64,000 nt of DNA, from IMG/VR virus record IMGVR_UViG_3300044701_002789, positions 1-64,000 of that record; one strand, 5' to 3'. The notes below the pieces were generated by a model that worked only from the letters and a program-made list of their open reading frames with translations, made no database searches and was not told where the DNA came from. The position numbers were made by a program, and so were the translations under genes. Shown here piece by piece: positions 9,756 to 48,974 of the stretch; position 1 is the first letter of the stretch; the number at the start of each line of letters is the position of its first letter.

Positions 9756-11513
9756 TTATGCGGAGTTTTGTGTTAATGTAACTACACCAGACCTAATCGT
9801 ATCTGGTGGTAAATTAAATGTATTACTAGATCCAGAATTTGATGTATTTGCTGATACTGGTGAAGATGATCCTTGTCCCGTACCCGTTGGTGAATTTAAT
9901 TGTGGATTTGATGGTATTGGTTTTGGATCACCACCGGGAAGTGCTGAACCATCTTGAGATATCTCTGTATATTTAACACATTCTTGTTCATCATCACAAG
10001 TAAAGAATTTTATAATTCCTGAGATAAATTCTAAAGCATTAAACAAACTAAAACCTGCAATGTTTCCACTTAAGATTCCGGCGATTGAAGAAATAAGTGC
10101 ATTTATTGGGGCAAGTGCTTTTTCTAATATTGATGCGATTGGCCCTAAAATACTATTTAAAAGTTCACCAACTAAATTTTCCGCAGCACAAAGAGGAACA
10201 TTAATAACATTATCTAGTAATTTAGAAAGAATGTTTGCTAAAAGAGTTTTAAGACCCGCGATTAACTTATTAAATAAACAATTAATAAGACTTATTCCAT
10301 TTTCCAATTGTTGATCCAATTTAACAGCTTCGCCTGGAAATAAAAATGGTGCAACTGTTTTGATTTTATCTTGAACTTGTTTTAAAATATAACCACGAAT
10401 TCCATTGATAGTATCTTTTGCAAATCTAGAAATTTCTTCAATCGCACCAAAAACTTGTTCTTGAACTTTTGCAGTGAATTCTGTAATTTTTGCAGAGAAT
10501 GCAGATACTTGATTAAATTTCTTTTTAAGATCTTCTATCGTATTAATAAGATTTTTTAGGATTCTCTGTATTCCTTTTGTGCGAGAATTATTCTTCTTAC
10601 AAACATCCAATAGAGGAATTTTCTTCCTCATATCAATGTCCTGTAAATTAGTTGCTTCGGTTCTTACATGTTGCGCTTCTGTTATTTGTAATGGTGTCTG
10701 TCCAATAATTCTATCATCAGGAACTAAAGCAGCTCTCAGTGGATCACCATCAGTATAAGTATTGTTAAACTGTTGATACCCTTGATTACAATTTCCAACC
10801 GAACCTGCATCTGATCCAGGTTTTCTAGATGCTTTGACTGTTGCGATTAATACTTGCCTTTCAACTTCGGATGCAGAAAGACCTGCTGCCCTTGCCTTTT
10901 GTCTTGCCTCAGTTGCTGCTTTAAAAACTTCCGATGATGGTGTTTTAGATGGATCTAATAGTTTTATAAGTTGCGCAATACTTAATTGATCCACATTTGG
11001 TGGAACCGGAACATTTGCTAAACTACCGGGACCAGTTCTTGGTGTTGGTGGTGTTGTTGTTGAAACAGATCCTCCAGATGAAGTTGTTGCGGGTTGATTT
11101 GGTGCAGATTCCCCTCTTACTCTTGGAACATTGTTATTGGAGTTTCCAATAACTCCCATAATATAACCCTCTTGACCTGCCATTCCATCCATAAAGAATC
11201 CAAATACAACGGATCCCGATTCAATTGATGGTGTTTCTGTTGCACCACCATGACCAGAACCAGCAGTTACAGGCATTACGACCTGACAATATGCCATGTC
11301 TTTTGGTGGAAGTTTATCTAATTCTCCAGTATGCCAATTAAACACGCGAACCTTATAACGATGTCCCCATCCCTTAATTCCGGTAACATTCGTAAAAGTT
11401 TCACCTTGAATATTATCCGACCAAGTTTCTTTTTGCTCCACTCTACCCAACCACCAAGGTGGATTCATGAAAAATTGAGGATTAAACAAAGAACCTGCAG
11501 TTACATCAGACAT
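9756..11513 (-). CDS. baseplate hub protein, gp5-like N-terminal OB fold
   Basis: WWLGRVE..RYKVRV..VFGFFMDGMAGQEGYIMG matches the T4 gp5 N-terminal pattern. Confidence 0.75.
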   Translation of the reverse strand: MSDVTAGSLFNPQFFMNPPWWLGRVEQKETWSDNIQGETFTNVTGIKGWGHRYKVRVFNWHTGELDKLPPKDMAYCQVVMPVTAGSGHGGATETPSIESGSVVFGFFMDGMAGQEGYIMGVIGNSNNNVPRVRGESAPNQPATTSSGGSVSTTTPPTPRTGPGSLANVPVPPNVDQLSIAQLIKLLDPSKTPSSEVFKAATEARQKARAAGLSASEVERQVLIATVKASRKPGSDAGSVGNCNQGYQQFNNTYTDGDPLRAALVPDDRIIGQTPLQITEAQHVRTEATNLQDIDMRKKIPLLDVCKKNNSRTKGIQRILKNLINTIEDLKKKFNQVSAFSAKITEFTAKVQEQVFGAIEEISRFAKDTINGIRGYILKQVQDKIKTVAPFLFPGEAVKLDQQLENGISLINCLFNKLIAGLKTLLANILSKLLDNVINVPLCAAENLVGELLNSILGPIASILEKALAPINALISSIAGILSGNIAGFSLFNALEFISGIIKFFTCDDEQECVKYTEISQDGSALPGGDPKPIPSNPQLNSPTGTGQGSSSPVSANTSNSGSSNTFNLPPDTIRSGVVTLTQNSA

Positions 11514-31945: not shown

Positions 31946-32311
31946 TTATACTTGTTTTCTTGGGTAATAAACTTTGTAATCCGTCTCCACCAGTTGTTTC
32001 TGCCATTCAATGATATCAGATAATCTCTCGGTTGTAAAGAAGGATTGTTTCATGTACCAGTCATACCATTTTTCGTGACCTTTAGATCTATTGCAAGAAT
32101 TACATGCACATAACACGTTTGTAATTTTATCGCTTCCACCTTTTGATCTTGGCGTAATGTGATCAAGTGTTATGTTTTCATCAGACCCGCAATAGGCACA
32201 TTTGTGATTCCATTTTTCTTTTATTGAATGTCTCCATTTTTTCCTTGCCTCAGAACTTGTTGTTGCCTCTAAATTATACAAGAGTTCTTTTGAAGTGGAG
32301 TATAGTGGCAT
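31946..32311 (-). CDS. HNH endonuclease (McrA-like)
   Basis: CAYCG..TLDHITPRSKGG..CNSCNRSK. Confidence 0.9.
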   Translation of the reverse strand: MPLYSTSKELLYNLEATTSSEARKKWRHSIKEKWNHKCAYCGSDENITLDHITPRSKGGSDKITNVLCACNSCNRSKGHEKWYDWYMKQSFFTTERLSDIIEWQKQLVETDYKVYYPRKQV

Positions 32312-32703: not shown

Positions 32704-33066
32704 TCAGTTGTTATCATTTGTTTTTATTTTATGTATGAATACTTTAAGTCCCCGTTTTTCTGCTTTTGAAATCATATCCTTAGTTCCAGTAGATTTTCCA
32801 TCCCATACGGCAACTAAAGCATCAGCATATTCTGCCATTTGCGAATTGCGAATGTGACCGGCACCTCTTCCATACTTTTCCCATTCTGCGGGAAATCTTT
32901 TAATTGGAACATCAAATTCTTCTGCAAGCATTTCTCCATAAGAATCTGCACCTCTTGCGCAACCTGAAATCACTTCAGTAATCTCGGTAGTAAAAGGACA
33001 GAGTTCCAGTGCATCTATAACATCTTTAATTGATGCAGTTCTTGAACCTGCAATGATGGTTTTCAT
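32704..33066 (-). CDS. SLOG-family (DUF2493/YspA-like) protein
   Basis: IIAGSR..ISGCARGAD..AGHIRN..WDGKSTGT. Confidence 0.85.
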   Translation of the reverse strand: MKTIIAGSRTASIKDVIDALELCPFTTEITEVISGCARGADSYGEMLAEEFDVPIKRFPAEWEKYGRGAGHIRNSQMAEYADALVAVWDGKSTGTKDMISKAEKRGLKVFIHKIKTNDNN

Positions 33067-33103
33067 TATATTTTCTATATATTATGTTCTAAATGGAGGT
33101 AGA

Positions 33104-33379
33104 ATGGACTTTTTATTGAAAATTAAAATTGGATGGATTTTTGTATTTGCATCATTTAAATTATGGTGCAAGCATATGATGAATAAATCTGGTTCCAATT
33201 TTTGGATAGATGGATTTTATAACTTTGATAATGGTCCAGAAGAACTGGAATTGACTTGGAGCAATTATGAAATTGCAATGAAACATCAAAAGAAACCCAG
33301 AGGTAGAGGAAAACCAAAGTATCCTAATAGTATCACAGGATTTCTAAAATGGCAACATGAGCATTTATGTTCACTATGA
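33104..33379 (+). CDS. hypothetical protein
   Basis: GGAGG RBS before ATG 33104. Confidence 0.5.
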   Translation: MDFLLKIKIGWIFVFASFKLWCKHMMNKSGSNFWIDGFYNFDNGPEELELTWSNYEIAMKHQKKPRGRGKPKYPNSITGFLKWQHEHLCSL

Positions 33380-33393
33380 TATGAAATTTATTT

Positions 33394-33401
33394 TATAAAT
33401 A
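33394..33401 (+). promoter_or_regulatory. T4-type late promoter TATAAATA of the coat-like operon
   Basis: exact consensus. Confidence 0.75.
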
Positions 33402-33404
33402 ATC

Positions 33405-33633
33405 ATGAGAAGAGAAATCTTCTCATTAGAGACAAGATGTATTACTAAAAGATTCCATTTTTGGTTCTTTCATTAATGCTTCACTCTAATTGGGTAATAT
33501 AATCCAATTCTAAAGAGAAGTAATCCCAGACGACTCATCTACAGTCGCCTGTGGAACTGAATCGTCTGGCATTATGTCAGGGAAGGATTGGATTATATCC
33601 CTCTCCAATTAACCTTTCTTTCCCTTAAGGAGA
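33405..33633 (+). ncRNA. candidate structured 5' leader (multiple hairpins)
   Basis: ATGAGAAGA-GAAA-TCTTCTCAT; CCAGACGA..TCTACAG-TCGC-CTGTGGA..TCGTCTGG; GGGAAGG-ATTGGA..TCCAAT..TTCCC next to the RBS. Confidence 0.55.
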
Positions 33634-33639
33634 AACAAA

Positions 33640-34467
33640 ATGGCAGATCCCGTATATATGCCCGATCCTTGGGCAGCACTTGCCGCACAACACTCAGACA
33701 TTCGTAGAGAAGGTTCTGTAGAACGTGGCGAGATTCGTTTTGATGTTGCTACTCGCACTGCTGACAACCGTTATGCTAATGCTATCGGTCAAGCAGATAT
33801 TCGTAGAGAGCAAGCATTAGGTTTTGGTGATGTAAAGTATTCTATTGCAGAACACTCAGAATCAACCAATCGTGACATTCTAACTACAGGTCATAATAAT
33901 CAAGTTAAAATTGATGAAGCTGCTGATAAAATTCAGCAAAGAGCTACTGATTTTTATCTTGCCGGTCAAGCAAGAGATTTTGATGCTTCCCGCGATCTTG
34001 CTGCTCTCAAAGCAAGTCAAGATATGGCTGCTCAAAAACTCAGCACAGAGATTCTTCTTTCTACTGAAAGAACTGCTACTGCTGCTGCTCTTGAGTCCGC
34101 TAAGGTTGCTGCTGCTGTAGCACTTGGTCAATCACAACTCAGCAAAGAAATTGCTGAGAGCAAGTATGATATCAGCAAGCAAATTGCTTATGAAAATGAA
34201 AAGACCCGTGATCTTGTTAATGCACTTAAGAATGACGAACTTAATCGTCTTCTTATTGAGCGTAACACCGATCTAACTCATTGCCGTCACGACTATTGGG
34301 GTGCCCGTGATGGACTCTTCAATAGTCAGTTCGCTGCACTATCTTCCCAAGTTAATTCTCAGTTAAACTCACTCAACAGTCAGATTGCTGAGACCCGTCA
34401 GGGTATGGTTAACTTTGGAACCATGGCTGGTGTTGGTCAATCCTCAACCAGCAACGCAGTTCGCTGA
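33640..34467 (+). CDS. alpha-helical/coiled-coil protein, putative major matrix/coat component
   Basis: strong TAAGGAGA RBS, GCT/CGT-rich codons, heptad-like Ala/Gln-rich sequence. Confidence 0.8.
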   Translation: MADPVYMPDPWAALAAQHSDIRREGSVERGEIRFDVATRTADNRYANAIGQADIRREQALGFGDVKYSIAEHSESTNRDILTTGHNNQVKIDEAADKIQQRATDFYLAGQARDFDASRDLAALKASQDMAAQKLSTEILLSTERTATAAALESAKVAAAVALGQSQLSKEIAESKYDISKQIAYENEKTRDLVNALKNDELNRLLIERNTDLTHCRHDYWGARDGLFNSQFAALSSQVNSQLNSLNSQIAETRQGMVNFGTMAGVGQSSTSNAVR

Positions 34468-34485
34468 TTTAGTTCAGTAGTTATC

Positions 34486-34519
34486 GGGGGAAGGTTGCCC
34501 ACTTCCTTCCCCTTTTTTT
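34486..34519 (+). terminator. intrinsic terminator inside the operon
   Basis: GGGGAAGG...CCTTCCCC followed by T7. Confidence 0.7.
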
Positions 34520-34533
34520 AAAGGAGAATAACT

Positions 34534-35115
34534 ATGGACTCAGCAGAAAGAAAACTCATTGATCTTTATAATCTTCTTGCACAATATCAAAGAAGTAATG
34601 ATCCGAATCTAATTGAAAACATTCAATCTTTACGATCACAGATTACCGAACTATTGAATACCCGTGTTGGAGGAAATGACAACATCAACATCGTTATAGA
34701 TGGAGATGATTGCCCTGATGAGTGCCCTCCAGGACCTCCAGGACCCCCCGGAGAACAAGGTCCACCGGGACCACAGGGACCTCCAGGACCCCCTGGAGAA
34801 CCAGGAGTGTGTACCTGCAAATGCAAAAGCATCCTGGTTTCAGACGATTATTCTGCTACTTGTGATGACTATTACATCGGTGTCAATAGCAACGAACCTG
34901 TTACTATTTCATTACCTGAAAACTGTACCGATTGTTGTGAAATTATTGTAAAAGCAGAAATGGGTCCACCATTGGGTAATCGTAAAGTTACTGTAACTAC
35001 TTCTGATGGATCATTGATTGATGGTGCTGATGATTACATTATCACAGTACCTTATGGAACAGTTTATGTGATCTGTAGAGGTGGCGATTGGTATATTATC
35101 TCAGCAAAATTATAA
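34534..35115 (+). CDS. short collagen-repeat, Cys-rich protein
   Basis: N-terminal coiled coil, CPDEC-(GPP/GEQ)x9-CTCKCK, C-terminal beta domain DDYYIGVN..VTISLP. Confidence 0.85.
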   Translation: MDSAERKLIDLYNLLAQYQRSNDPNLIENIQSLRSQITELLNTRVGGNDNINIVIDGDDCPDECPPGPPGPPGEQGPPGPQGPPGPPGEPGVCTCKCKSILVSDDYSATCDDYYIGVNSNEPVTISLPENCTDCCEIIVKAEMGPPLGNRKVTVTTSDGSLIDGADDYIITVPYGTVYVICRGGDWYIISAKL

Positions 35116-35117
35116 CA

Positions 35118-35876
35118 ATGAAATTTAATATTCAACCATCTCTTCCTGACGATAGAGATTACATCTATAAAAATGATAGCACAGAAGTTCTTAGAGAATC
35201 TGTGGATCTTCGTGAATGGGATACAATTGTGGAATCACAAAATTCATTAGGTAGTTGTTCTGCAAATGCAATTACAAATGCTTATGAACTTTGTGTGAAT
35301 CGCATGTATCCAGAATACTTCACTCATCTAAGTAGATTATTTCTTTATTACAATGCTCGTGTTGAATACGGAATCATTGAAGAAGATGAAGGAATGTTTT
35401 TGAAAGATGGTCTGAAATCATTATCAAAGTTTGGTATTTGCACCGAAGAGTTATGGCCCTATAATCCAGAAAACTTTACAGTACAACCAACTGAAGAATG
35501 TTATGAAGATGCAAAGAAAAGAAAAATTTCAAAGTATCAAAAACTCATTAGCATTTACTACATGACTCAAGTGTTGAATTACAACAAACCAGTTGTATTT
35601 GGAATGCAAATTTACGATAGCTTCATGGATCTAAATGAGCGTATTTCAACTGTAACATTTCCTTCACGAAAGGAAAAAAGTCTTGGTGGTCATGCAATGT
35701 GTATGGTAGGATATGACTTAGGTAAGAAACTGTTTTTAGCAAAGAACAGTTTTGGTACTGATTGGGGCGATAAGGGATACTGTTGGATTCCTTTTGATTA
35801 TGTAAGACAGGAAGGATACGACATTTGGACTTTTGATATACCCAATCAAACCGGAGAAAACAATGTACTATCCTAG
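35118..35876 (+). CDS. papain-like cysteine protease (C1A)
   Basis: SVDLR..QNSLGSCSA, LSRLFLYY, GGHAMCMVGY, KNSFGTDWGDKGY. Confidence 0.93.
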   Translation: MKFNIQPSLPDDRDYIYKNDSTEVLRESVDLREWDTIVESQNSLGSCSANAITNAYELCVNRMYPEYFTHLSRLFLYYNARVEYGIIEEDEGMFLKDGLKSLSKFGICTEELWPYNPENFTVQPTEECYEDAKKRKISKYQKLISIYYMTQVLNYNKPVVFGMQIYDSFMDLNERISTVTFPSRKEKSLGGHAMCMVGYDLGKKLFLAKNSFGTDWGDKGYCWIPFDYVRQEGYDIWTFDIPNQTGENNVLS

Positions 35877-35994
35877 ACCCTACTATCCTTATTACAGGAG
35901 ATATTATGACTATTATGACTACTATCGTTATGGGTGCAATCCTTATTATCACAGATATTGCCCTTATTACTCATATTATCCATACTATTATTAA
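35863..35994 (+). CDS. 43-aa Tyr-rich peptide (23 Tyr)
   Basis: GGAG RBS; MYYPRPYYPYYRRYYDYYDYYRYGCNPYYHRYCPYYSYYPYYY; missing from the ORF track. Confidence 0.8.
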   Translation: MYYPRPYYPYYRRYYDYYDYYRYGCNPYYHRYCPYYSYYPYYY

Positions 35995-36009
35995 ATAGGA
36001 GAATTTAAA

Positions 36010-36258
36010 ATGTATTATAGATATCAACCATATCCTTATTATAACAGATATTATAATCTAAATCCATATTATTATGGAAGATATTATAATCCTTATTACA
36101 ACTATCAAAGAAATATAATTGATAGTCAGATTTCTGATGTGAATCAGAGTATTAATAATTTTGGTTCAATGACGGATGTGATTCAAGATGCAAACGTCTA
36201 TCAACTTATGACACCTGAACCTGAAAATGTTGGAATCTGTACTGAACCACCCGCATAA
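36010..36258 (+). CDS. Tyr/Asn/Pro-rich small protein
   Basis: AGGAG RBS; N-terminal NPYY repeats. Confidence 0.8.
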   Translation: MYYRYQPYPYYNRYYNLNPYYYGRYYNPYYNYQRNIIDSQISDVNQSINNFGSMTDVIQDANVYQLMTPEPENVGICTEPPA

Positions 36259-36262
36259 TTAA

Positions 36263-36297
36263 GGGGAGTGATTTTTAGATCACTCCCTCTTTTTTTT
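36263..36297 (+). terminator. intrinsic terminator ending the plus-strand operon
   Basis: GGGAGTGAT...ATCACTCCC followed by a T run. Confidence 0.8.
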
Positions 36298-36298
36298 A

Positions 36299-38204: not shown

Positions 38205-39299
38205 TTATGGTCTCGTCCATCCATAACAAGATTTTCTTACGCCTCGCAAAACGGCATCAAGACCACATTTGATATTATGTTCTTTTGAAAATTCTGTTAT
38301 ATTATTGAAAGTATAGATTATTCCTTCTGGACTTTTAATTTTATAAATTTTCTTTTCTAAAATTGTTTCCGGTAAAGTCCATCCTTTATGTTGTTTATGT
38401 CTTTTGCCCAATACCTGAGAAATACACCCATCATCTAAATTATACTTACTACAAAATGTTACAATATTTTCAAAGATAATTATTTCACCATTTGGATTTT
38501 TTAGTTTATGTATTTTTTTATTCCTTTCTAATGCCTTCCTTTTAATGTTTTCAATAGTTTCTGAGTTATGTTTTTTCCCATACATAGGATTTCCTTCACC
38601 AGAAAATCTTTCACTTTTATTTTCTAAAAATCCAGGAGAGAATATACCAAGACCAAGTTCTTTCATCTTATTTCCATTTCTTTTTCCATTTTTACTTCTT
38701 TCTTCAAAAGATAGACCACAAATTCCACTTTTATTATCTCTATTTTTAGCACCACCTATTTTTCCAGCAGCACTTCTTTCTTCAAATCCAAATCCACATA
38801 CTCCAAGTCCAAGTTCTTTATTTTTTTGACCTGCTTTCTTACTATTTTCTTGTTTTTGTTCTGGAGTTAATGAAAATATTCCAAGTCCATTTTCTTTTGC
38901 ATAATTTCCATTTTTTACTCGTTGTTCTTTTGTGAGAGAGCAAACTCCTCTTTTTAATTCTGCATTCTGGTTTCCAATTACCTTTCCGTGTCTTCTTCTT
39001 GCTTTTCTAACACTTTCGCTAGGAATATATCCACTTACACCATCACCGCCATTAGTAAGATTACGAAGAATACCAGTTCCATTATCTTTTCTACCAAACA
39101 CAGCAATCATATAAATTTCGTGCTTAAATGCTTCTTGTTCGGTTAAGTTTTGTTTGAGAAAGATTATTCTTGATTTGTCTTTGGGTGGAGAGACACTTTC
39201 TTTTTTACCTTTTATAAAACATCGGTCATCTTTTCCTTTACCAATATAATAAGGTGTTCTGTCTTCTCTCAAATAAGCATAGGTGTAAAAATCATTCAT
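38205..39299 (-). CDS. free-standing GIY-YIG-like homing endonuclease with NUMOD3 and repeat DNA-binding domains
   Basis: FYTYAYLREDRTPYYIGKG..E..LRNLTNGGDG; SGEGNPMYGKKH. Confidence 0.85.
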   Translation of the reverse strand: MNDFYTYAYLREDRTPYYIGKGKDDRCFIKGKKESVSPPKDKSRIIFLKQNLTEQEAFKHEIYMIAVFGRKDNGTGILRNLTNGGDGVSGYIPSESVRKARRRHGKVIGNQNAELKRGVCSLTKEQRVKNGNYAKENGLGIFSLTPEQKQENSKKAGQKNKELGLGVCGFGFEERSAAGKIGGAKNRDNKSGICGLSFEERSKNGKRNGNKMKELGLGIFSPGFLENKSERFSGEGNPMYGKKHNSETIENIKRKALERNKKIHKLKNPNGEIIIFENIVTFCSKYNLDDGCISQVLGKRHKQHKGWTLPETILEKKIYKIKSPEGIIYTFNNITEFSKEHNIKCGLDAVLRGVRKSCYGWTRP

Positions 39300-40199: not shown

Positions 40200-40411
40200 C
40201 TTAAACTTTCCTTAACTATCTGATATTGCTATCAGGATTGGACTATATCATCACCATTTCTGGTGTCGGACGCTTATTCCTGTTATTAAGGGAACTATAT
40301 CCCTCAGGTAGTCTCTGAACCTTTCTTAGATGTATCTAAGACTTGGATGCTGATTGCCCACTTGGGGTTTCCAGCAATTCATCCGATTTAAAGAGCGCAA
40401 AGCACAACTTG
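40200..40411 (-). mobile_element. group I intron (212 nt, no ORF) in psbA after codon 334
   Basis: 5' exon ends in U (CGT), intron ends in G; P AATTGCTGGAAA, Q AATCAGCA, R TCAGAGACTA, S GATATAGTCC; P1 GAGCGT/GCGCTC. Confidence 0.95.
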
Positions 40412-41413
40412 ACGCTCGTGCATAACCTCCATTCCCAGTCCTGCTCTTGTTAAAATGTCCGCCCAAGTAGGAACTACTCGGTTCTGACTATCCAGAATAC
40501 TCTGGTTGAAATTTAGTCCGTTGAGGTTAAAAGCCATCGTAGAAACCCCGAGAGCAGTGAACCAAATACCAACTACAGGCCAAGCGGCGAGGAAGAAGTG
40601 TAGTGAACGGGAGTTATTGAAGGACGCATATTGGAAAATAAGACGACCGAAATAACCGTGTGCAGCCACGATGTTATAAGTTTCTTCCTCTTGACCGAAC
40701 TTGTAACCATAGTTCTGAGATTCAGTCTCAGTGGTTTCACGAACCAGTGAAGAAGTCACAAGTGAACCATGCATAGCACTGAACAGTGACCCACCAAACA
40801 CACCTGCAACACCGAGCATATGGAACGGATGCATAAGAATGTTATGTTCTGCCTGGAACACAAGCATGTAGTTGAAAGTGCCAGAGATACCTAGAGGCAT
40901 TCCATCACTGAAAGAACCTTGACCGAAAGGATAAACAAGGAATACGGCAGTGGCAGCAGCAACAGGAGCACTGTAAGCAACCATAATCCAAGGACGCATA
41001 CCTAGACGATAAGAAAGTTCCCATTCACGACCCATATAGCAGAAGACACCAATCAGGAAGTGAAATACAACAAGTTGGTAAGGACCACCATTATAAAGCC
41101 ATTCATCAAGACTCATTGCTTCCCAGATAGGATAAAAATGAAGTCCGATTGCATTAGAAGAAGGAACAACAGCACCAGAGATAATGTTGTTTCCATACAT
41201 GAGTGAACCAGAAACAGGTTCACGAATGCCATCAATATCTACAGGAGGTGCAGCAATGAAGGCAATAACAAAGCAGATGGTCGCAGCAAGAAGGCAAGGA
41301 ATCATAAGAACTCCGAACCACCCGACATACAACCTATTGTTGGTTGAAGTCACCCACTCGCAGAAGTCCTGCCAGGGATTAGAAATTGAACGTGTAGCAA
41401 TTGTAGCAGTCAT
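40412..41413 (-). CDS. psbA: photosystem II D1, exon 1 (334 codons)
   Basis: unambiguous D1 sequence from MTATIAT to GMEVMHER. Confidence 0.98.
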
Positions 41414-41424
41414 AAGAATTAAAA

Positions 41425-41510
41425 AGAAAATAAGATGAATCCAGGGAAGATTCTGTGCGTTATTTTCCTTCTCTACCCTCAAGAGAAGGTAAGATGAGAG
41501 ACGTATTTTA
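41425..41510 (-). ncRNA. PhotoRC-II-like psbA leader RNA
   Basis: TACGTCTCTCAT..CCTTCTCT-TGAGGGT-AGAGAAGG..TTCCCTG in the psbA 5' UTR; recognised from memory of the motif. Confidence 0.6.
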
Positions 41511-42680: not shown

Positions 42681-43256
42681 TTAATGATTTGGGTCAATAA
42701 AAATACCTTTATGTTGTACCGGATCCAATGGTTTAGATCCTTTCGCTTTTTGTTTTGGAGATCTATTTCTAACAATTCCCGCCTGAACTCCTTTTTCATT
42801 TGGTTCACTCATACCTTGAGTCCTACTATTCAATGAAGCACGACGAGATCCAACAGGTTGAGATACTAAAGTAGTTCCAGGTCTTGCTGCTGTAGATACA
42901 CTTTTTTTAATAGATTGCATTGCTTTTGCTGTAGAAACCGGATTTTTCGTATCTCCAGTTTTTGTAGAATTTTGAATAAAGGTATTTGGTTTGTCTCCAG
43001 GAGTATATTGTACTTTGATTGGATGTTTTTTATGTGTAAAAGTATGTGTATTAGATCGTTCATCATGCTTATAGTCAATATCAGGATCCCTTGGATTATT
43101 AATAGGACTAGCGAATCTATGCACAGATTGACTAACTTTACTAGTGTCAGTACCCGCATTTTTTGCTGCACTTAAAGGACTTTCTTTACCCCCTCTTAAT
43201 CTTTTTGCTGCCGGAGGAATCCAAGCATCTGCCATAAACTGCTTAAATGTCTTCAT
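42681..43256 (-). CDS. basic hypothetical protein (MKTFKQFM N-terminus, possible internal head protein)
   Basis: N-terminal motif typical of T4-like small virion-associated proteins. Confidence 0.55.
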   Translation of the reverse strand: MKTFKQFMADAWIPPAAKRLRGGKESPLSAAKNAGTDTSKVSQSVHRFASPINNPRDPDIDYKHDERSNTHTFTHKKHPIKVQYTPGDKPNTFIQNSTKTGDTKNPVSTAKAMQSIKKSVSTAARPGTTLVSQPVGSRRASLNSRTQGMSEPNEKGVQAGIVRNRSPKQKAKGSKPLDPVQHKGIFIDPNH

Positions 43257-43882
43257 TTGCAACTATCTCCAGACCATAAGGCACCTTCTGCTTTGCGTCT
43301 TCTAAGAAGTCCTGCTTCTACATTTGTTCCTGGATTCCTATAAAGTTCAAGTGCTGCTGGAACTTCGTCCCACTTCTTCTCTCTAAGGACTCTGGTAATA
43401 GTATTAAATCCAGAAGAACCATAAAAATTAGCACCAAGATTATAGGCAAAACTGAGAAGTGCCCCCTGTTGTTTTTCATTCATTTCACTCCAATAAGGAA
43501 TTTTTTCAAGAGGTGGTAAATATTCCTTTTCTAATTGATAGATTAAAAGGTCGTCTGCTTCTTTTTGAGTAATTGTATTACCAATCATGAAACGAGAACC
43601 ATCCATTCTACGAGTGCTTCCCCATCCGATTGTAATTGGAAGTCCACCAGTAAGGGGATCATAATATGCTTTGAGGTGACATCCCTCAAATTCCTTGATT
43701 AAAGCAACTCCAGGATGTGGGAGTTTTCTTTGTATTTTATTTTCATTTCTAAATCTTCTCTTAAACTCTTCAACAACTTCTGGTGAAGTATGTTCTTGAA
43801 GATATTCAAAAGCATCAATTTGATAAGGTTCTCCAATGAAGAACTTTGCGGCATTTGTGAATTTAAAATCTGACATAATCAT
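43253..43882 (-). CDS. endolysin, GH24 lysozyme
   Basis: IKEFEGCHLKAYYD..TIGWGST..ALLSFAYNLG..GLLRRRKAE. Confidence 0.92.
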   Translation of the reverse strand: MIMSDFKFTNAAKFFIGEPYQIDAFEYLQEHTSPEVVEEFKRRFRNENKIQRKLPHPGVALIKEFEGCHLKAYYDPLTGGLPITIGWGSTRRMDGSRFMIGNTITQKEADDLLIYQLEKEYLPPLEKIPYWSEMNEKQQGALLSFAYNLGANFYGSSGFNTITRVLREKKWDEVPAALELYRNPGTNVEAGLLRRRKAEGALWSGDSCK

Positions 43883-44391
43883 CCTTCTTGAAATACGGAA
43901 ACATAAACAGTCCCGGTTTTTGTGAGTGGTAGAAGTTTATCTCTTAAATCTTGATTATACATTCTCACACACCCATGTGTGGAGAATAAAGGTTGTTTAG
44001 GTGCCCATGCTCCAGGCCATCCAGCAGCACTCCCTCCTCCATGAATCATAATGCCTGCACGACCAAATTTTGATTCTTGATTTTCCAATTCAACCAAATC
44101 AAAACTATACCATCCATATGCCATCAGAGTTCTATCGTAACCAGGATTTGCTCCAACTCTTTCATAATCTCTGTAAATCTGTCCGATTCTATACAATCCA
44201 GGAGGAGTATCAGTTCTTACTGCACGAAACTCAAAGTCACTACCTTGCCCTCTTGCAAGTGCTGGAACTTCCCATAGAAGTTTTCCATCAAAACTAAATG
44301 CCTTTGCAGTTTCTACAATATCATTTACAATGATATGAGAATCTCCTTGTTTAAATCCAAATTCTTGTGGTCTACGTTTTGGTCCTATCAT
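43879..44391 (-). CDS. L,D-transpeptidase (YkuD) domain protein
   Basis: TPPGLY..IMIHGGG..STHGCVRM catalytic His/Cys motif. Confidence 0.85.
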   Translation of the reverse strand: MIGPKRRPQEFGFKQGDSHIIVNDIVETAKAFSFDGKLLWEVPALARGQGSDFEFRAVRTDTPPGLYRIGQIYRDYERVGANPGYDRTLMAYGWYSFDLVELENQESKFGRAGIMIHGGGSAAGWPGAWAPKQPLFSTHGCVRMYNQDLRDKLLPLTKTGTVYVSVFQEG

Positions 44392-44606
44392 GGTTAATAC
44401 CTAAACTCTTCTAACTTATCTAATATTTCATTAAGTTGCTTTTGCGCAAACAACTTACATTCATCACTACGGGATTCGTGCTGTAGTCTGTTTTTTTGTT
44501 GTAGAATTAAAATCTTGAAATGATCTTTCGTAATTTGCCCCCTTGACATAAGCACAAAAAATCCCCAACACCTTATTTAGGTATTAGGGATATTATATTA
44601 GTCAAT

Positions 44607-45134
44607 TCAAACGGATGCAGTTTCCCGAACAGTTGACTTCACATATTCTAGAACATTTTCTGGGGAGGATACTTCATAAGGATCAGTATCTGCATTATCC
44701 CTAAATCCAGGTTCAACAAAGATTTGTTCAATAATCCTGTTGTTTACCACAGCAGCATATCGCCAAGAACGCTCACCAAAACCAAGATTGGCCTTGGTAA
44801 CGAGTTGACCCATAGCACGAGTGAAGTAAGCATTGCCATCTGGAATAAGTTTTACATTTTTGATGTTTTGGTCTTGTGCCCAAGCATTCATCACAAATGC
44901 ATCATTGACGGAAATACAATAGATTTCATCAATACCCAATTCCTTAAATTCTTCAAACTTTTCTTCAAATCCAGGAAGTTGATATGCTGAGCAAGTTGGA
45001 GTAAATGCACCAGGAAGAGAGAAGATAACAACTCTCTTACTATCAAAAAGATCGTAAGCTTTACGTTTTACAAATTCGCCAGACTCCCGGAAAATAAACT
45101 CAACATTCGGAATCTGATTAGGTGTGTTTGTCAT
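44607..45134 (-). CDS. peroxiredoxin (Prx5/type II)
   Basis: LPGAFTPTCS..SVNDAFVM..G.RSWRYA. Confidence 0.93.
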   Translation of the reverse strand: MTNTPNQIPNVEFIFRESGEFVKRKAYDLFDSKRVVIFSLPGAFTPTCSAYQLPGFEEKFEEFKELGIDEIYCISVNDAFVMNAWAQDQNIKNVKLIPDGNAYFTRAMGQLVTKANLGFGERSWRYAAVVNNRIIEQIFVEPGFRDNADTDPYEVSSPENVLEYVKSTVRETASV

Positions 45135-45142
45135 AGTTTACC

Positions 45143-45262
45143 TCACCACACTCCCGGAATTATCTGCCCACTAACGAAATATGCGCCGACTGCGGCAACG
45201 AATCCAAGCATCGCCAGTCTTCCGTTCCAACGTTCGGCAAATTCAGTAAAAATTTTGTTCAT
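45143..45262 (-). CDS. hli: high-light-inducible protein
   Basis: AERWNGRLAMLGF..GQIIPG; missing from the ORF track. Confidence 0.93.
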   Translation of the reverse strand: MNKIFTEFAERWNGRLAMLGFVAAVGAYFVSGQIIPGVW

Positions 45263-45273
45263 TTGAGTACTCC

Positions 45274-45360
45274 TCAATAAGTTTTAGATAGTTGATTAAC
45301 AGAGTGTGCAAGAAGCACAAAAAATGCAATACTAGTAACAGTAAAAATAACTTCAGTCAT
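45274..45360 (-). CDS. 28-aa single-TM peptide between the hli genes
   Basis: MTEVIFTVTSIAFFVLLAHSVNQLSKTY; TGATG coupling. Confidence 0.5.
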   Translation of the reverse strand: MTEVIFTVTSIAFFVLLAHSVNQLSKTY

Positions 45361-45554
45361 CAGAAGATCCCGAAGAAGAAGTTGCCAGTGAGAGTATAAG
45401 AAATAAACCCAGCAATAATACCGACCATTGCCCAGCGCCCATTGACTCTCTCCTTGACTTGATTAGGGGTTAGCATTCCATAATTTTCATAATACATTAC
45501 GGGTTCTTTTGCGAAGAGATTTTGCTGACCCCTTTCATTTGTCGTAACCGTCAT
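45360..45554 (-). CDS. hli: high-light-inducible protein
   Basis: NLFAKEP..ERVNGRWAMVG. Confidence 0.9.
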   Translation of the reverse strand: MTVTTNERGQQNLFAKEPVMYYENYGMLTPNQVKERVNGRWAMVGIIAGFISYTLTGNFFFGIF

Positions 45555-45663
45555 TGTTAATTTTTGTAACTACTCCAGTAGTATATAGGAAGAAAAAGAA
45601 AAAGTCAAGGGGGGAACCCACCCCTTGACCAGTTTTGTCAGGGATTACTGACGAGCATCAAGT

Positions 45664-46542
45664 TCAGAACTTGAATCCAAGACCAGCAGTAAGAACTGGG
45701 GAATAAGTGCCGTCAGTAGCACCATAGGCATTAGCAGCAGTGGTGGTTGGGAACTTCAGGTCAGCAAAACCAACGAGAGAGTTGGTCAGACGACCTTCAA
45801 GACCAAGAGCAAATACGACTTGACCACGATCACCAACAGCAGACTGGAAGTTAGCATCAGTGTTGTTAACAAAAGGAATTTGATAACCAACACCGGTATA
45901 GATGTTAGCACGACTTACGCCACTGGACGCCTTAGAAATACTCCAATCATAAGAGAGGAGAGCACCACCACCAGCACCAATTTCACCTGCAGGAGTGCCA
46001 ACAAAGTTGACATATGGACGAACGGAGATGGCGTTCTGATTGTTGAAGGTTTTTACAGCATAACGACCCTGAACCGTGCCACCAGCAATAGTACGTTCTG
46101 CATCGTAACCATTACCATCAACACCTTGTTGGTTCAGAAGAACACCGGCACCGAGGTAATTACCAACTCCTTGTGCCTTTTGAGCAGCAGCAAGTTCAAG
46201 AGCACTTACCCGTGAATTAGTTGCAGCAATCTCACGGGAGAATTCTGCACGGAGAGCAGCAGCAGTACGAGCATCTGCTTCAGTATAGAATTGAGTGATA
46301 TTATCAAGGCAAGCATTAGTCAATGCGGCAAGTTCAGAACGAGTTGCAGGTTGACCAGGACGGAAAGTACCATCGGGATAACCAGCAACGCAACCATAAC
46401 GACTAATCAGGTTTGAGATTGCCTGATAAGACCATTCGGTTGGTTGAACGTCACGCAGTTGTGAAACACTGGTAACTTGTGCCATTGCAGGAGCAGCGGT
46501 AGTAGCAACAACAGCGGCAGCAATAAAAGAACGAATCATCAT
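45664..46542 (-). CDS. SLH-domain outer membrane protein (N-terminus like the Som/OprB-type cyanobacterial porins, short beta-barrel)
   Basis: signal peptide AxA, VTSVSQLRDVQPTEWSYQA..YGCVAGYPDGTFR, coiled coil, terminal F. Confidence 0.85.
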   Translation of the reverse strand: MMIRSFIAAAVVATTAAPAMAQVTSVSQLRDVQPTEWSYQAISNLISRYGCVAGYPDGTFRPGQPATRSELAALTNACLDNITQFYTEADARTAAALRAEFSREIAATNSRVSALELAAAQKAQGVGNYLGAGVLLNQQGVDGNGYDAERTIAGGTVQGRYAVKTFNNQNAISVRPYVNFVGTPAGEIGAGGGALLSYDWSISKASSGVSRANIYTGVGYQIPFVNNTDANFQSAVGDRGQVVFALGLEGRLTNSLVGFADLKFPTTTAANAYGATDGTYSPVLTAGLGFKF

Positions 46543-46632
46543 AGAGTTTTGTTTTTTAATAAACGACATTTTGTTAAGAATTACAACTGAATTCTTAACA
46601 CCTATTTAGTGTACACCAGAAGCGTCCGGTTG

Positions 46633-47424
46633 TCAAGCTTTCTTTGCGGATGGTTCGGTAATCCGTCCAAGATAGGGGTCATAATTGGTTATTTGCTCAA
46701 TCGTTATTTCAGAACCTTGCTTCTGCCAAAAATCTAATATTGCATTATGACTATTGCGATGAAACACGTCAATATGTTCCGGATGAATAGAAGACCCAAG
46801 TTCTATTTTATAAAGAAGAACTGGAGTCGCATAAGTAACGCCAGAATTGTAAATTAGGTCATCTGCAACTGGTCTTGGTCTAACACCATTATCCAATTTA
46901 TACTTATCATCGCGAATATGATTTTTGATCAATTTTGAAGCATGATGACGAGTAATAACATAACAAGCAGTAGAAAAGTCATTTACGAATCTAGTATGAA
47001 TAGGAACTACAATATCACCCGTGCAAATAATTGCCAATTGAATTACATCCCAAGCATAAGGAGCGCGAGCAATAAAATCTTGCCAAGTAAAACTCCAATA
47101 CTTCACTAACTCCAAATTACAATCATCTTCCATGATAATTGCATAAGGAGTATCAGATGTCTCATACCAATGTTTAATCGCTTTTAGATGAGATGTGACA
47201 CAACCAATTTCTCCAGAAGTCATAGAATCTGGATATTTACCTTTTATGATTTCACTCAAATCATCTTCTCGCCCATCATAAGCAGATATACGGGTATAAT
47301 TTTCAATTTCCCAATACTTAAATTGATCTTCCATATACTGTTTTCTTTCTGGTTGTTCATCCAGATTGAGATAATATACGGGACCAAAGTTTTTAAGTTT
47401 ATATGCTGATTTATTTTTATCCAT
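46633..47424 (-). CDS. glycosyltransferase family 25
   Basis: YLNLD..R..RISAYDG..GEIGCVTSH..IMEDD. Confidence 0.88.
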   Translation of the reverse strand: MDKNKSAYKLKNFGPVYYLNLDEQPERKQYMEDQFKYWEIENYTRISAYDGREDDLSEIIKGKYPDSMTSGEIGCVTSHLKAIKHWYETSDTPYAIIMEDDCNLELVKYWSFTWQDFIARAPYAWDVIQLAIICTGDIVVPIHTRFVNDFSTACYVITRHHASKLIKNHIRDDKYKLDNGVRPRPVADDLIYNSGVTYATPVLLYKIELGSSIHPEHIDVFHRNSHNAILDFWQKQGSEITIEQITNYDPYLGRITEPSAKKA

Positions 47425-48229
47425 TATATTTTTTTAGATAATCTTGTTTTGAGTAATATTTTTGCAATTGTAATTTGTCCATAGATTGAATTTGTTTCCA
47501 AATATCATTATTGTTTACCATGTGTGGATTAGTGATCCAAGAATTATGTCCCCTAGAATGCTCCAAATGATAAATGGTATCTTCAATTCTCTCAATATTA
47601 TACCCCAAAGTCGTAAATCTGTAAAATCTCTCCTTATCCTCTGGGGCATATGCTACAAAGTTTTCATTTTCCATACCACCTTCAATATAGACTTTACGGT
47701 TAAAAAACTGCACCCACCCAAAGTCGGAAAGATATTTGTTAGAGTTTTTTTCAAGATAATCATAATCAAGTGTTTCTAAAAACTTAGAAACAATCTCATC
47801 ACTAGGAGGAACCTGCCTTTGCCATGTACCTTGTCCGTATGGATAAACTACATCACATTCATCTCTTAAAATAGATTCATATGCAAGTTTATAAGAATGC
47901 AGAGGAAGAATTACATCACAATCATAATTTACTACAACTTTAGTATCGGATTCCATAATCATTTCATTCAAAATTCTTTGACGATGAAAAGTAGAATCTA
48001 AACTTTTTTCAAAAATATGATTAATATTAATATCAACTTCAAGTATGGATTTTAGTATAGGAAGTGCTTCCTTCTTAAATATAGATTCAGAATCAACTTC
48101 TTTAATAATAATATTTGCATCAAAGTTTTCCAATAAAAATGCTGTAGTTGCAATTACATTACGAAGACGATCAGATGATTCAATACGAATTGGAATAATA
48201 AATGTTGCTTCAGTTAAATCTATTTTCAT
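47417..48229 (-). CDS. glycosyltransferase (GT-A, GT7 C-terminal-like)
   Basis: YDCDV, GGMENENFVAYAPED..R, YHLEH. Confidence 0.8.
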   Translation of the reverse strand: MKIDLTEATFIIPIRIESSDRLRNVIATTAFLLENFDANIIIKEVDSESIFKKEALPILKSILEVDININHIFEKSLDSTFHRQRILNEMIMESDTKVVVNYDCDVILPLHSYKLAYESILRDECDVVYPYGQGTWQRQVPPSDEIVSKFLETLDYDYLEKNSNKYLSDFGWVQFFNRKVYIEGGMENENFVAYAPEDKERFYRFTTLGYNIERIEDTIYHLEHSRGHNSWITNPHMVNNNDIWKQIQSMDKLQLQKYYSKQDYLKKYNG

Positions 48230-48974
48230 TTGGATAATTTCTAGTATCTTTATTTTTTTCTAAAACATAATCTAATTCTTCTTGATTTACCATCCAAGAA
48301 CCTTCCGGATGATCAATTACTTTATTGTAAATCACACTGGAAGAACTAATTCTATTTGAGTGTTCTCTATTTGATATTAAATAATCATCAATAATAAATG
48401 GCATTCCATTTTCATATCTCATCCTATGATAAAAATCTGTGTCCATTAATAATTGAAGTTTTTCATCAAACCCAACAAACTTATCAGTCAAAAAAGAAAC
48501 ACATGACGGACTACCAAGAAGATTTCTACCTTCTAACATCATATCAGTCCATCTCGGAATCATGGGTCTAAAGTGTTGATTTCCATTCTGAGTATGCGCA
48601 AATCCATTAAAACACCAATTACAAGATTTATCATAAAATGCCAATTTTATTTTGGATAATGCAAATTTATCAATAAAGAGATCATCTTGGAAGATTAGTT
48701 TAGTAATTTTCCCACTACACATTTCAACCGCAGAATTTGTATTTGCTGGACCATTACCAAGATTTTCTTCATTCTTAAAGTACTTTATCTCAAAGTAATT
48801 TGCATATTGCCCACATACTTCAAGAATAGAATCGTCCTTAGATTGATCGGAAATACAAACTTCAAAATTCTTGAAGTCTTGAATTCGGATTGTTTCAAAT
48901 AACTCAGAAAGATAACGATCACCAATACCTTTCATCTCATAAGTTGGAATTGCAATAGAAATCTCAGGCATCAA
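48210..48974 (-). CDS. glycosyltransferase family 2
   Basis: ISIAIPTYE..ISDQSKDD..FQDD. Confidence 0.85.
   Translation of the reverse strand: MMPEISIAIPTYEMKGIGDRYLSELFETIRIQDFKNFEVCISDQSKDDSILEVCGQYANYFEIKYFKNEENLGNGPANTNSAVEMCSGKITKLIFQDDLFIDKFALSKIKLAFYDKSCNWCFNGFAHTQNGNQHFRPMIPRWTDMMLEGRNLLGSPSCVSFLTDKFVGFDEKLQLLMDTDFYHRMRYENGMPFIIDDYLISNREHSNRISSSSVIYNKVIDHPEGSWMVNQEELDYVLEKNKDTRNYPNENRFN

What the first reader, a model, noticed from the sequence alone, without database searches (positions are those of the whole stretch)
33394..36297. Self-contained late operon resembling a spore-coat/occlusion-body kit
Seen in sequence: a plus-strand island in a minus-strand region. It runs TATAAATA promoter, long leader, 275-aa helical protein with a very strong RBS, internal terminator, Cys-rich short collagen protein, papain-like protease, 43-aa peptide with 23 Tyr, second Tyr-rich protein, terminator. 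Established knowledge: Tyr-rich and Cys-rich small proteins (e.g. Bacillus CotC) and collagen-like proteins (BclA) build cross-linked spore coats and exosporia, and baculoviruses pair occlusion bodies with a papain-family cathepsin. Inference: the phage may build an extra protective matrix or shell for virions or the infected cell (UV-absorbing, dityrosine/disulfide cross-linked) with protease-controlled maturation or release. I know of no such system described in cyanophages.
Basis: partly seen in the sequence, partly recalled or inferred. Interest (0 to 1): 0.85.

Follow-up and report, generated by a model that had tools for sequence, protein, structure and literature searches.

The report
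Cyanophage accessory fibre-protein operon
A freshwater T4-like cyanophage carries a self-contained, widely shared late operon whose best-resolved product looks like a phage virion fibre, so it more likely builds extra fibres or "hair" on the virus particle than a spore-coat or occlusion body, though no experiment has tested this.

Summary
A plus-strand island at 33394-36298 runs: TATAAATA, a 240-nt leader, a 275-aa all-helical protein (A), a terminator, a Cys-rich collagen protein (B), a C1A peptidase (C), a 43-aa peptide with 23 Tyr (D), a second Tyr-rich protein (E), and a terminator.

The genes are inherited together. A is followed by B in 33 of 34 non-redundant viral loci. Tyr-rich proteins occur in about 25 loci and the peptidase in 20.

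New findings:
1. B's C-terminal domain has the phage T4 gp9/gp10 (tailspike XD) fold, which is typical of virion fibres and baseplate adaptors.
2. A and E share a conserved, homologous C-terminal module of about 30 aa.
3. The leader is a structured RNA supported by covariation. It is absent from Rfam and is found only upstream of A.
4. Distant phage lineages replace the late promoter and leader with a LuxR/GerE-type regulator.
5. A has no cellular homologue.

Best reading (about 0.45): an accessory virion fibre or decoration module. The spore-coat and occlusion analogy rests on composition only. The module, the A family and the leader RNA are, as far as I could find, undescribed.

The parts
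33053..33379 (+). Upstream plus-strand ORF, whose true start is probably near 33176. It has a hydrophobic N-terminus and a basic PRGRGKPK stretch. It is an optional companion of the module.
   Evidence: Conserved at 48-78% identity directly upstream of the leader in 6 close relatives (family F7). No Pfam or PHROG hit.
33394..33401 (+). T4-type late-promoter-like box, TATAAATA.
   Evidence: The TAAATA core is invariant in 16 of 16 aligned relatives. Other copies in the window sit 20-90 nt upstream of ORF starts. That this box is the T4-type late promoter is from prior knowledge of T4-like phages.
33402..33639 (+). Conserved structured 5' leader RNA: a 5'-terminal hairpin, a three-helix domain that allows a variable insertion, a long bipartite hairpin, and a pyrimidine tract followed by AAGGAG.
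   Evidence: On 16 sequences, 96.2% of cells are paired against 35-50% when the partners are slid. 18 pairs show changes on both sides against 9.3+/-2 in shuffles (0 of 500 shuffles reach it). MFE is -82.4 kcal/mol, z = -6.15. No Rfam family matches. All 32 true copies in IMG/VR lie directly upstream of an A gene or at a contig end.
33640..34467 (+). Gene A: a 275-aa, Ala-rich, all-helical rod about 37 nm long if it is a single helix. It has a conserved N-terminal HSDIRRE motif and a near-invariant C-terminal tail (TRQGMVNFGTMAGVGQSSTSN.VR).
   Evidence: AlphaFold2 predicts a helix over residues 10-260, mean pLDDT 81.7. Alignment A1 holds 34 sequences, with rod length varying from 201 to 360 aa. 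No Pfam or PDB match. The family has 121 clusters among 1.84 billion representatives, always with the module at the C-terminus. No homologue in 185,579 cellular genomes.
34486..34519 (+). Intrinsic terminator or attenuator hairpin between A and B.
   Evidence: A GC-rich hairpin occupies the A-B spacer in 14 of 14 loci tested, including distant lineages with unrelated sequence.
34534..35115 (+). Gene B, a trimeric fibre-type protein. It has two N-terminal helices, a Cys pair, nine G-X-Y triplets, a Cys cluster, and a C-terminal gp9/gp10-like beta domain (residues 98-192).
   Evidence: AlphaFold2 gives pLDDT of about 95 for the C-terminal domain. Foldseek against PDB gives E 1.4e-5 to 5.7e-4 at probability 1.0 to phage baseplate, tailspike and capsid-spike chains, with T4 gp9 at E 8.4e-3. 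Foldseek against BFVD gives 267 hits. PHROG tail collar and tail fiber families match.
35118..35876 (+). Gene C: a xylellain-like C1A cysteine peptidase with an intact Gln41-Cys47-His192-Asn210 set. It has no signal peptide and no I29 propeptide, and it starts 2 nt after the stop codon of B.
   Evidence: Pfam PF00112. PDB 3OIS matches at E 6e-38 with the catalytic motifs aligned. Present in 20 of 34 loci.
35863..35994 (+). Gene D: a 43-aa Tyr/Arg/Pro peptide with 23 Tyr and 2 conserved Cys. Its start overlaps the end of C.
   Evidence: It is conserved with mostly synonymous change.
36010..36258 (+). Gene E: 82 aa. The N-terminal third is Tyr/Arg-rich, followed by a copy of the C-terminal module of A (SQI..V.QSINNFGSMTDVIQ).
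   Evidence: An HMM built from the tails of A hits the E family at E 2e-8 to 1e-4 among 3421 ORFs. The window's own E scores 4.8e-6 and 2.6e-5.
36263..36298 (+). Intrinsic terminator that closes the operon.
   Evidence: 11-bp stem followed by a T-run.

Best explanation
The operon is an accessory late module that builds additional fibrous appendages or surface decoration on the virion.

Shown:
- The genes travel together across many large phages.
- A is a long helical rod, and the transcript is built for its over-expression: a strong SD, a structured leader and a downstream attenuator hairpin.
- B has the parts of a trimeric fibre. These are N-terminal helices, a collagen stretch flanked by Cys, and a C-terminal domain with the T4 gp9/gp10 (XD) fold. 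Phages use that fold to join trimeric fibres to baseplates, capsids or each other.
- A and E carry the same conserved C-terminal module.

Inferred:
- B, and in most relatives its non-collagen paralogue B2, forms trimers.
- The shared tail of A and E is a docking or co-assembly peptide that brings the rod and the Tyr-rich protein into the same structure. It may bind the XD-like domain, by analogy with gp10-gp11/gp12 and the CBA120 TSP complex.
- The Cys clusters and Tyr-rich peptides harden or glue the assembly by oxidative cross-links once it is outside the reducing cytoplasm.
- The C1A peptidase trims a component during maturation.
- The leader RNA stabilises the transcript or controls translation of A.
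For: - Synteny: A is followed by B in 33 of 34 non-redundant loci. Tyr-rich proteins with the A-type tail occur in about 25, and the peptidase in 20.
- Fold of the C-terminal domain of B: phage baseplate, tailspike and capsid-spike chains and T4 gp9/gp10. It also matches Gp9/Gp10 baseplate proteins, minor tail proteins, tail fibres and collagen-repeat proteins of phages and giant viruses. PHROG tail families match.
- XD domains are documented as trimer-to-trimer assembly modules (PMC8825819).
- A is a rod that varies in length while both ends stay conserved, as expected of a spacer or fibre.
- The attenuator hairpin after A is kept as a feature in 14 of 14 loci.
- The late-promoter core is invariant.
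- A is exclusive to viruses.
- The phage has a separate lysozyme, so the peptidase is not needed as the endolysin.
Against: - No virion proteomics or imaging exists for any carrier, and no cultured phage in INPHARED has A or B.
- The module sits among auxiliary genes (psbA, phoH, thyX), not in the structural block, and its neighbours in other phages are not consistently structural.
- By length the matched fold is most like XD1/gp9. The cited paper regards that domain's role as a spacer, not a proven docking site.
- The heptad periodicity of A is weak, so a coiled-coil trimer is not established.
- A dedicated LuxR-type regulator in distant lineages is unusual for virion genes.
- Nothing assigns a role to D, E or the peptidase.
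Confidence: 0.45

Rival explanations
1. The products assemble into a separate cross-linked protective matrix or shell around virions or the lysing cell, resembling a spore coat or an occlusion body. The peptidase controls maturation or release.
For: - Composition: D is 53% Tyr, E has a Tyr-rich head, and B is Cys-rich collagen.
- The nearest named language-model cluster for D and E is spore coat protein CotT.
- One BFVD match to the domain of B is annotated 'BclB C-terminal domain'.
- A is strongly over-expressed relative to the rest, as expected for a bulk matrix protein.
- The module is an island with its own regulation.
Against: - The CotT scores of 0.70 and 0.52 are below the tool's threshold for a lead.
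- No sequence-level membership in any coat, exosporium or polyhedrin family.
- The domain of B matches virion adaptor folds first.
- No oxidase, transglutaminase or peroxidase was found in the window ORFs scanned.
- No occlusion-like structure is known for any phage (my own knowledge, not tested here).
Confidence: 0.15
2. The module builds an intracellular or cell-envelope structure that is not part of the virion. A would be a cytoskeleton-like, scaffold-like or membrane-coating amphipathic helix. D and E would be Tyr/Arg 'sticker' proteins that condense it. Together they would organise assembly sites or remodel the host envelope.
For: - A shows 3.67-residue (hendecad-like) rather than clean heptad periodicity in residues 190-250 and is Ala-rich.
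- Single members of the A family give weak hits to Phasin and to Baculo_PEP_C.
- Tyr/Arg-rich disordered peptides are typical condensate drivers (general knowledge).
- The module has its own regulator or RNA leader.
- It lies among host-interaction genes.
Against: - The weak Pfam hits are each in only one or two of 34 members, at E > 0.002.
- The fibre architecture of B, with Cys knots that need an oxidising environment, fits an extracellular role better.
- No membrane segments or signal peptides are visible in A to E by inspection of the translations.
Confidence: 0.2
3. The genes are merely neighbours and have unrelated functions.
For: - The peptidase also occurs alone in other jumbo phages, for example Burkholderia phage FLC9.
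- The peptidase is missing from 14 of 34 loci.
Against: - The order A, B, Tyr-rich protein is kept across lineages in which A has fallen to 31-46% identity and the flanks are unrelated.
- A and E share a sequence module.
- B, C and D are translationally coupled in the window.
Confidence: 0.05

Closest known systems
T4 gp9/gp10 and Ackermannviridae TSP4-N 'XD' adaptor domains (branched tailspike complexes)
   Same: The C-terminal domain of B (about 95 aa) has the same beta-sandwich fold. It sits in a protein built to trimerise. In the known systems the fold links trimeric fibres to the baseplate or to one another (PMC8825819).
   Different: Here the domain is C-terminal and follows a short collagen helix. 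There is no detectable sequence similarity, no enzymatic or receptor-binding head, and no evidence of baseplate attachment.
Collagen-like fibre proteins of phages and giant viruses (minor tail proteins of actinophages; Klosneuvirus and Mimivirus collagen-repeat proteins)
   Same: Short G-X-Y stretches combined with the same C-terminal fold, and a viral origin. A glycosyltransferase and sugar cluster lies 10 kb away in the window, as in Mimivirus fibril biogenesis (general knowledge).
   Different: None of these is described with a companion helical rod, Tyr-rich peptides or a C1A peptidase.
T4 fibritin (wac)
   Same: A long helical rod made late, with a small conserved C-terminal element that could nucleate or dock the assembly.
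   Different: No sequence similarity. The heptad signal in A is weak. The tail is Gly/Gln/Asn-rich and is shared with a Tyr-rich protein, unlike the foldon.
Bacillus spore coat and exosporium proteins (BclA/BclB, CotC/CotU/CotT)
   Same: The same ingredients at the level of composition: a collagen-like protein, Cys-rich and Tyr-rich small proteins, and an associated protease.
   Different: No homology by Pfam or NCBIfam. No C1q-like match among the listed PDB hits. ESM similarity is below the lead threshold. The system is viral, not cellular.
Xylellain (PDB 3OIS), a bacterial C1A peptidase
   Same: Gene C aligns over 233 residues at E 6e-38 with the catalytic residues conserved.
   Different: Encoded by a phage, translationally coupled to a fibre gene and to a Tyr-rich peptide. 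Its substrate is unknown.

Membership tests
Peptidase C1A (papain family) | Pfam PF00112 above the gathering score | tested here: met
   58.4 bits against a 20.7-bit cut-off, E 1.4e-15.
Peptidase C1A (papain family) | Catalytic Gln/Cys/His/Asn present | tested here: met
   Gln41, Cys47 (GSCSANA), His192 (GGHA) and Asn210 (KNSFG) are aligned to 3OIS.
Peptidase C1A (papain family) | I29-type inhibitory propeptide and signal peptide, as in cathepsin and V-cath zymogens | tested here: not met
   Only about 25 residues precede the mature-domain motif, and Pfam reports no I29 hit.
Collagen triple-helix repeat protein | Uninterrupted G-X-Y repeats recognised by PF01391 | tested here: inconclusive
   Nine triplets. 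The score of 26.8 bits is just under the 27.2-bit cut-off. Many orthologues carry PF01391.
T4 gp9/gp10-like (XD) virion adaptor domain | Beta-sandwich fold shared with gp9/gp10/TSP4-N | tested here: met
   Foldseek probability 1.0, E 1.4e-5 to 5.7e-4, about 100 aligned columns, rmsd 2.3-3.1 for most. T4 gp9 matches at E 8.4e-3.
T4 gp9/gp10-like (XD) virion adaptor domain | Sequence-level family membership | tested here: not met
   No Pfam or NCBIfam hit outside the collagen region. Only PHROG tail collar, E 1.1e-7, extends beyond it.
T4 gp9/gp10-like (XD) virion adaptor domain | Protein is part of the virion and binds a trimeric partner | not testable with these tools
   Needs virion proteomics, structural work or multimer prediction.
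BclA/BclB exosporium collagen-like glycoproteins | C-terminal C1q/TNF-like (BclA) or BclB-type domain, and an N-terminal exosporium-targeting motif | tested here: not met
   No NCBIfam or Pfam hit. No BclA or C1q chain among the 50 listed PDB matches. The N-terminus is a two-helix segment. One BFVD hit annotated 'BclB C-terminal domain' is a fold-level lead only.
Tyr-rich spore coat proteins (CotC/CotU/CotT) | Sequence homology to the family | tested here: not met
   No Pfam, PHROG or NCBIfam hit. ESM scores of 0.70 and 0.52 are below the lead threshold. Only the composition is similar.
Baculovirus occlusion system (polyhedrin, PEP, V-cath) | A polyhedrin or PEP homologue plus a cathepsin zymogen | tested here: not met
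   No polyhedrin hit. Baculo_PEP_C matches 1 of 34 A homologues at E 0.002. The peptidase lacks a propeptide.
T4 fibritin-like trimeric coiled coil | Heptad-repeat coiled coil with a C-terminal foldon | tested here: inconclusive
   A continuous helix is predicted, but power at period 3.5 is weak. There is no sequence similarity.
Known cis-regulatory RNA families (Rfam 15) | Leader reaches a family's gathering score | tested here: not met
   The best hit is freshwater-2 at 22 bits against 49.9, and it is not reproduced in relatives.

The most novel reading that the evidence does not exclude
The module encodes a previously unknown self-assembling, oxidatively cross-linked protein coat or adhesive 'hair'. 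A helical rod and Tyr-rich peptides co-assemble through a shared C-terminal module onto collagen-like trimers. A dedicated C1A peptidase matures the assembly. Expression is gated by a new structured leader RNA or, in other lineages, by a LuxR-type regulator. This would be the functional equivalent of a spore coat or exosporium nap for virus particles.
Probability: 0.12. Interest if true: 0.85.

Novelty: new variant of a known kind. Interest (0 to 1): 0.62.

Why it matters
If these proteins decorate virions, they would define a widespread accessory appendage system in abundant freshwater cyanophages and other large phages. Such a system could affect adsorption, stability in light and oxygen, aggregation on particles, and host range.

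Three items are concrete, testable and apparently undescribed:
- The A family.
- The docking module shared by A and E.
- The 240-nt leader RNA, which covariation supports and which is tied strictly to A.

The replacement of a protein regulator by an RNA leader in different lineages shows how one cassette is adapted to different phage transcription programmes.

Tried and rejected
- DNA and tblastn searches of cultured phages with the whole region, A and B gave nothing. Only the peptidase has homologues in isolates, and there it stands alone.
- Profile searches of A against PDB and Pfam gave only noise.
- A scan of 185,579 cellular genomes with the A profile found no relative.
- A Foldseek search with A was not attempted, because a single helix is uninformative.
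- The weak Rfam hit to freshwater-2 in the leader was rejected. It is far below the gathering score and absent from five relatives.
- 22 of the IMG/VR matches to the 20-nt leader pattern were rejected as unrelated coding DNA.
- An endolysin role for the peptidase was considered and set aside. A phage lysozyme lies at 43253-43882, and the single 'endolysin' annotation belongs to a homologue with 28% identity.
- A RiPP-precursor reading of D and E was considered and rejected. No modifying enzyme such as a P450 or radical SAM protein was found among the conserved families of the module.
- The neighbours of the module in other phages were screened for structural genes. No consistent pattern emerged.
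- Literature searches for a described equivalent found none.
Full report
**Context.** The window comes from a 258-kb T4-like cyanophage genome from a metagenome (IMG/VR UViG_3300047564_003571). It carries psbA (40388-41482), phoH and thyX. It also has baseplate-hub and gp32 genes about 72% identical in DNA to Synechococcus phages S-SCSM1 and S-SKS1. Related loci carry psbA and psbD and the PhotoRC-II RNA.

**Observation.**
- The late-type box TATAAATA lies at 33394.
- A 240-nt leader follows.
- Gene A (33640-34467) has AAGGAG 7 nt upstream of its ATG.
- A GC hairpin with a T-run lies at 34486-34519.
- Gene B (34534-35115) has nine G-X-Y triplets flanked by Cys clusters.
- Gene C (35118-35876) is a C1 peptidase that starts 2 nt after the stop codon of B.
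- Gene D (35863-35994) encodes 43 aa with 23 Tyr, and its start overlaps the end of C.
- Gene E (36010-36258) follows, then a terminator at 36263-36298.
- The flanking genes are on the minus strand.
- D and E are under purifying selection. Changes between relatives fall mainly at third codon positions.

**Co-occurrence.** Two scans of IMG/VR, seeded with A and with C, returned 86 loci. A tblastn table and a family census of 34 non-redundant loci give these counts:
- A is present in 34 loci.
- B-family proteins sit immediately downstream in 33; the exception is cut by the contig end.
- The peptidase is present in 20.
- Tyr-rich small proteins are present in most.

The order A, B, Tyr-rich protein persists where A has dropped to 31-46% identity and the flanks are unrelated. 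Most relatives also carry B2, a paralogue without collagen. B2 has an N-terminal YGVV.VG motif and GxGIS repeats and ends in the same C-terminal domain. The window lacks B2. Two loci found through the peptidase, L077 and L079, also contain an A-like gene and three B paralogues.

**Protein A.**
- AlphaFold2, run on a 34-sequence alignment, predicts one uninterrupted helix over residues 10-260. The pLDDT exceeds 90 over the core, and the last 15 or so residues are disordered.
- The alignment shows a conserved N-terminal HSDIRRE motif, a rod that varies from 201 to 360 aa through insertions and deletions, and about 90 conserved C-terminal residues. These end in the near-invariant TRQGMVNFGTMAGVGQSSTSN.VR.
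- There is no Pfam, PHROG or PDB relative.
- A profile of the C-terminal 91 positions finds only 121 clusters among 1.84 billion representatives. The module is always C-terminal and never fused to a recognisable domain.
- No relative exists in 185,579 cellular genomes, and the nearest ESM Atlas clusters are all viral.
- Heptad periodicity is weak, and residues 190-250 show an 11/3 signal. The oligomeric state is therefore open.

**Protein B.**
- AlphaFold2 predicts two N-terminal helices, a low-confidence collagen segment and a C-terminal beta domain (residues 98-192) with pLDDT near 95.
- Foldseek against the PDB returns phage virion parts as its 13 best matches, and the first 11 have E <= 0.001. 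They are the Klebsiella KP1 baseplate, an Acinetobacter tailspike, CBA120 TSP4 N-terminal fragments, the Pa223 capsid spike, the T4 baseplate complex, T4 gp9 and gp10.
- Foldseek against BFVD gives 267 hits at E <= 1e-3. They include proteins named Gp9/Gp10 baseplate, minor tail and tail fiber, and collagen-repeat proteins of phages and giant viruses.
- In T4 gp10 and CBA120 TSP4 these XD domains assemble trimeric partners. The XD1/gp9 type, which B most resembles by size, is regarded as a spacer (PMC8825819).
- The Cys pairs on either side of the collagen stretch resemble interchain disulfide knots. That is inference.

**Peptidase C.** Its closest solved relative is the bacterial C1A enzyme of PDB 3OIS, which I recall is xylellain of Xylella. 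The match has E 6e-38, and Gln41, Cys47, His192 and Asn210 are conserved. C has no long propeptide. A separate phage lysozyme lies at 43253-43882.

**Proteins D and E.** D is 53% Tyr with two conserved Cys. E has a Tyr/Arg-rich head. It also carries a segment that an HMM built only from the tails of A recognises at E 4.8e-6. Across the family the E-values run from 2e-8 to 1e-4 among 3421 ORFs. A and E therefore share a homologous C-terminal module of about 30 residues. In distant lineages E even ends in ..NQLR, just as A ends in ..NNVR. This points to a common docking or co-assembly function, which is inferred.

**Regulation.**
- The leader is more conserved than the adjacent coding DNA.
- RNAalifold predicts 59 pairs, 19 of them with compensatory changes.
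- For the 54-pair core, 96.2% of cells pair against 35-50% when the partners are slid. 18 pairs change on both sides, against 9.3+/-2 in shuffles, and none of 500 shuffles reaches that number.
- The window sequence alone folds to -82.4 kcal/mol, z = -6.15.
- L005, L019, L021, L022, L029 and L072 carry an insertion of about 60-90 nt at one junction, a common trait of structured RNAs.
- No Rfam family matches.
- A 20-nt invariant pattern was scanned across IMG/VR. Every true leader (32 stretches) lies directly upstream of an A gene or at a contig end. The other 22 matches are unrelated coding DNA.
- The TAAATA core of the promoter box is invariant in 16 of 16 sequences.
- In 14 distant loci there is no leader. 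Instead a plus-strand LuxR/GerE-type protein sits directly upstream of A (Pfam GerE E 5e-15, with weaker sigma-70 region 4 hits).
- A GC-rich hairpin in the A-B spacer is present in 14 of 14 loci tested, although the sequences are unrelated. Over-production of A relative to the downstream genes is therefore a conserved design feature.

**Interpretation.**
- The best-supported reading is an accessory virion fibre or decoration module, with confidence about 0.45. The only confidently resolved fold is a phage virion adaptor fold. B and B2 have fibre architecture. A is a variable-length rod with conserved ends. The system is exclusive to viruses and carries a late-type promoter.
- The weaknesses of this reading are: no experimental data and no cultured carrier; a location outside the structural gene block; inconsistent neighbours in other phages; an ambiguous oligomeric state for A; and no assigned role for D, E or the peptidase.
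- The spore-coat or occlusion reading keeps about 0.15. The compositional parallels are real, and the nearest named ESM cluster for D and E is CotT. However, those scores fall below the tool's threshold for a lead, and no family-level membership exists.
- An intracellular scaffold, condensate or membrane-coating role keeps about 0.2.

**Novelty.** Searches of the paper library found no description of this gene set. The individual kinds are known: collagen-like phage fibre proteins, XD-fold domains and C1A peptidases. The combination appears undescribed, as do the A family, the module shared by A and E, and the leader RNA. I rate it a new variant of a known kind (phage appendage modules). There is about a 0.12 chance that it is a new kind of cross-linked virion coat.

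Noticed in passing
window 33402-33639; L005-L030, L072: The leader is a candidate new cis-regulatory RNA motif, about 240 nt long with six helices and strong covariation. It is absent from Rfam 15 and found only upstream of gene A in the cyanophage clade.
   Followed up: yes
L089 8533-9240; also L035-L052 upstream of A: In distant phage lineages a LuxR/GerE-type HTH protein, with weak similarity to sigma-70 region 4, sits directly upstream of A on the same strand. It takes the place of the late promoter and leader.
   Followed up: partly
L005 7501-8112, L008 7472-8083 and most relatives: B2 is a 147-245-aa paralogue of B without collagen or Cys. It has an N-terminal YGVV.VG motif and GxGIS repeats. 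It is present in most relatives but missing from the window. L045 has five B-family genes in a row.
   Followed up: partly
window 46633-53578 (minus strand): A glycosylation cluster: GT25, GT2, GT11, DUF5672, an RXYLT1-like protein, two methyltransferases and an NAD-dependent epimerase/GDP-mannose dehydratase. It could glycosylate virion fibres or host surface polymers. No link to the operon has been shown.
   Followed up: no
window 43253-46569 (minus strand): A run of cell-envelope-related genes: phage lysozyme, a YkuD L,D-transpeptidase domain protein, a peroxiredoxin, and a 300-aa protein with an S-layer homology (SLH) domain.
   Followed up: no
window 38205-39299 and 40388-41482 (minus strand): psbA has a TATAAATA box 85 nt upstream. 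A NUMOD3-type homing-endonuclease-like gene lies close by. Further HNH endonucleases lie at 31946-32311 and 57279-57749.
   Followed up: no
L022 2000-5600 and 11100-12300; L072 8290-12524: Large tRNA arrays of about 20 genes each flank the module in two relatives. L072 also has a group I intron match (10924-11110), and L022 has an abiF RNA match.
   Followed up: no
window 33053-33379 (+): A conserved small ORF upstream of the promoter, with a hydrophobic N-terminus and an AT-hook-like PRGRGKPK stretch. It matches no family and is present in only 6 close relatives.
   Followed up: partly
L037 7402-7863, L044 8670-9194, L045 9535-10197, L089 11566-12048: A further conserved family of the module in distant lineages, 106-220 aa with the motif LE.L.MAKEL..EY.DR.A..HN.W. 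Separately, a DUF7201 coiled-coil gene lies after E in five close relatives. The window has neither.
   Followed up: no
window 33565-33642: A weak Rfam match to the freshwater-2 RNA (22 bits against 49.9, E 0.23). It is not reproduced in five relatives and is judged to be chance.
   Followed up: yes
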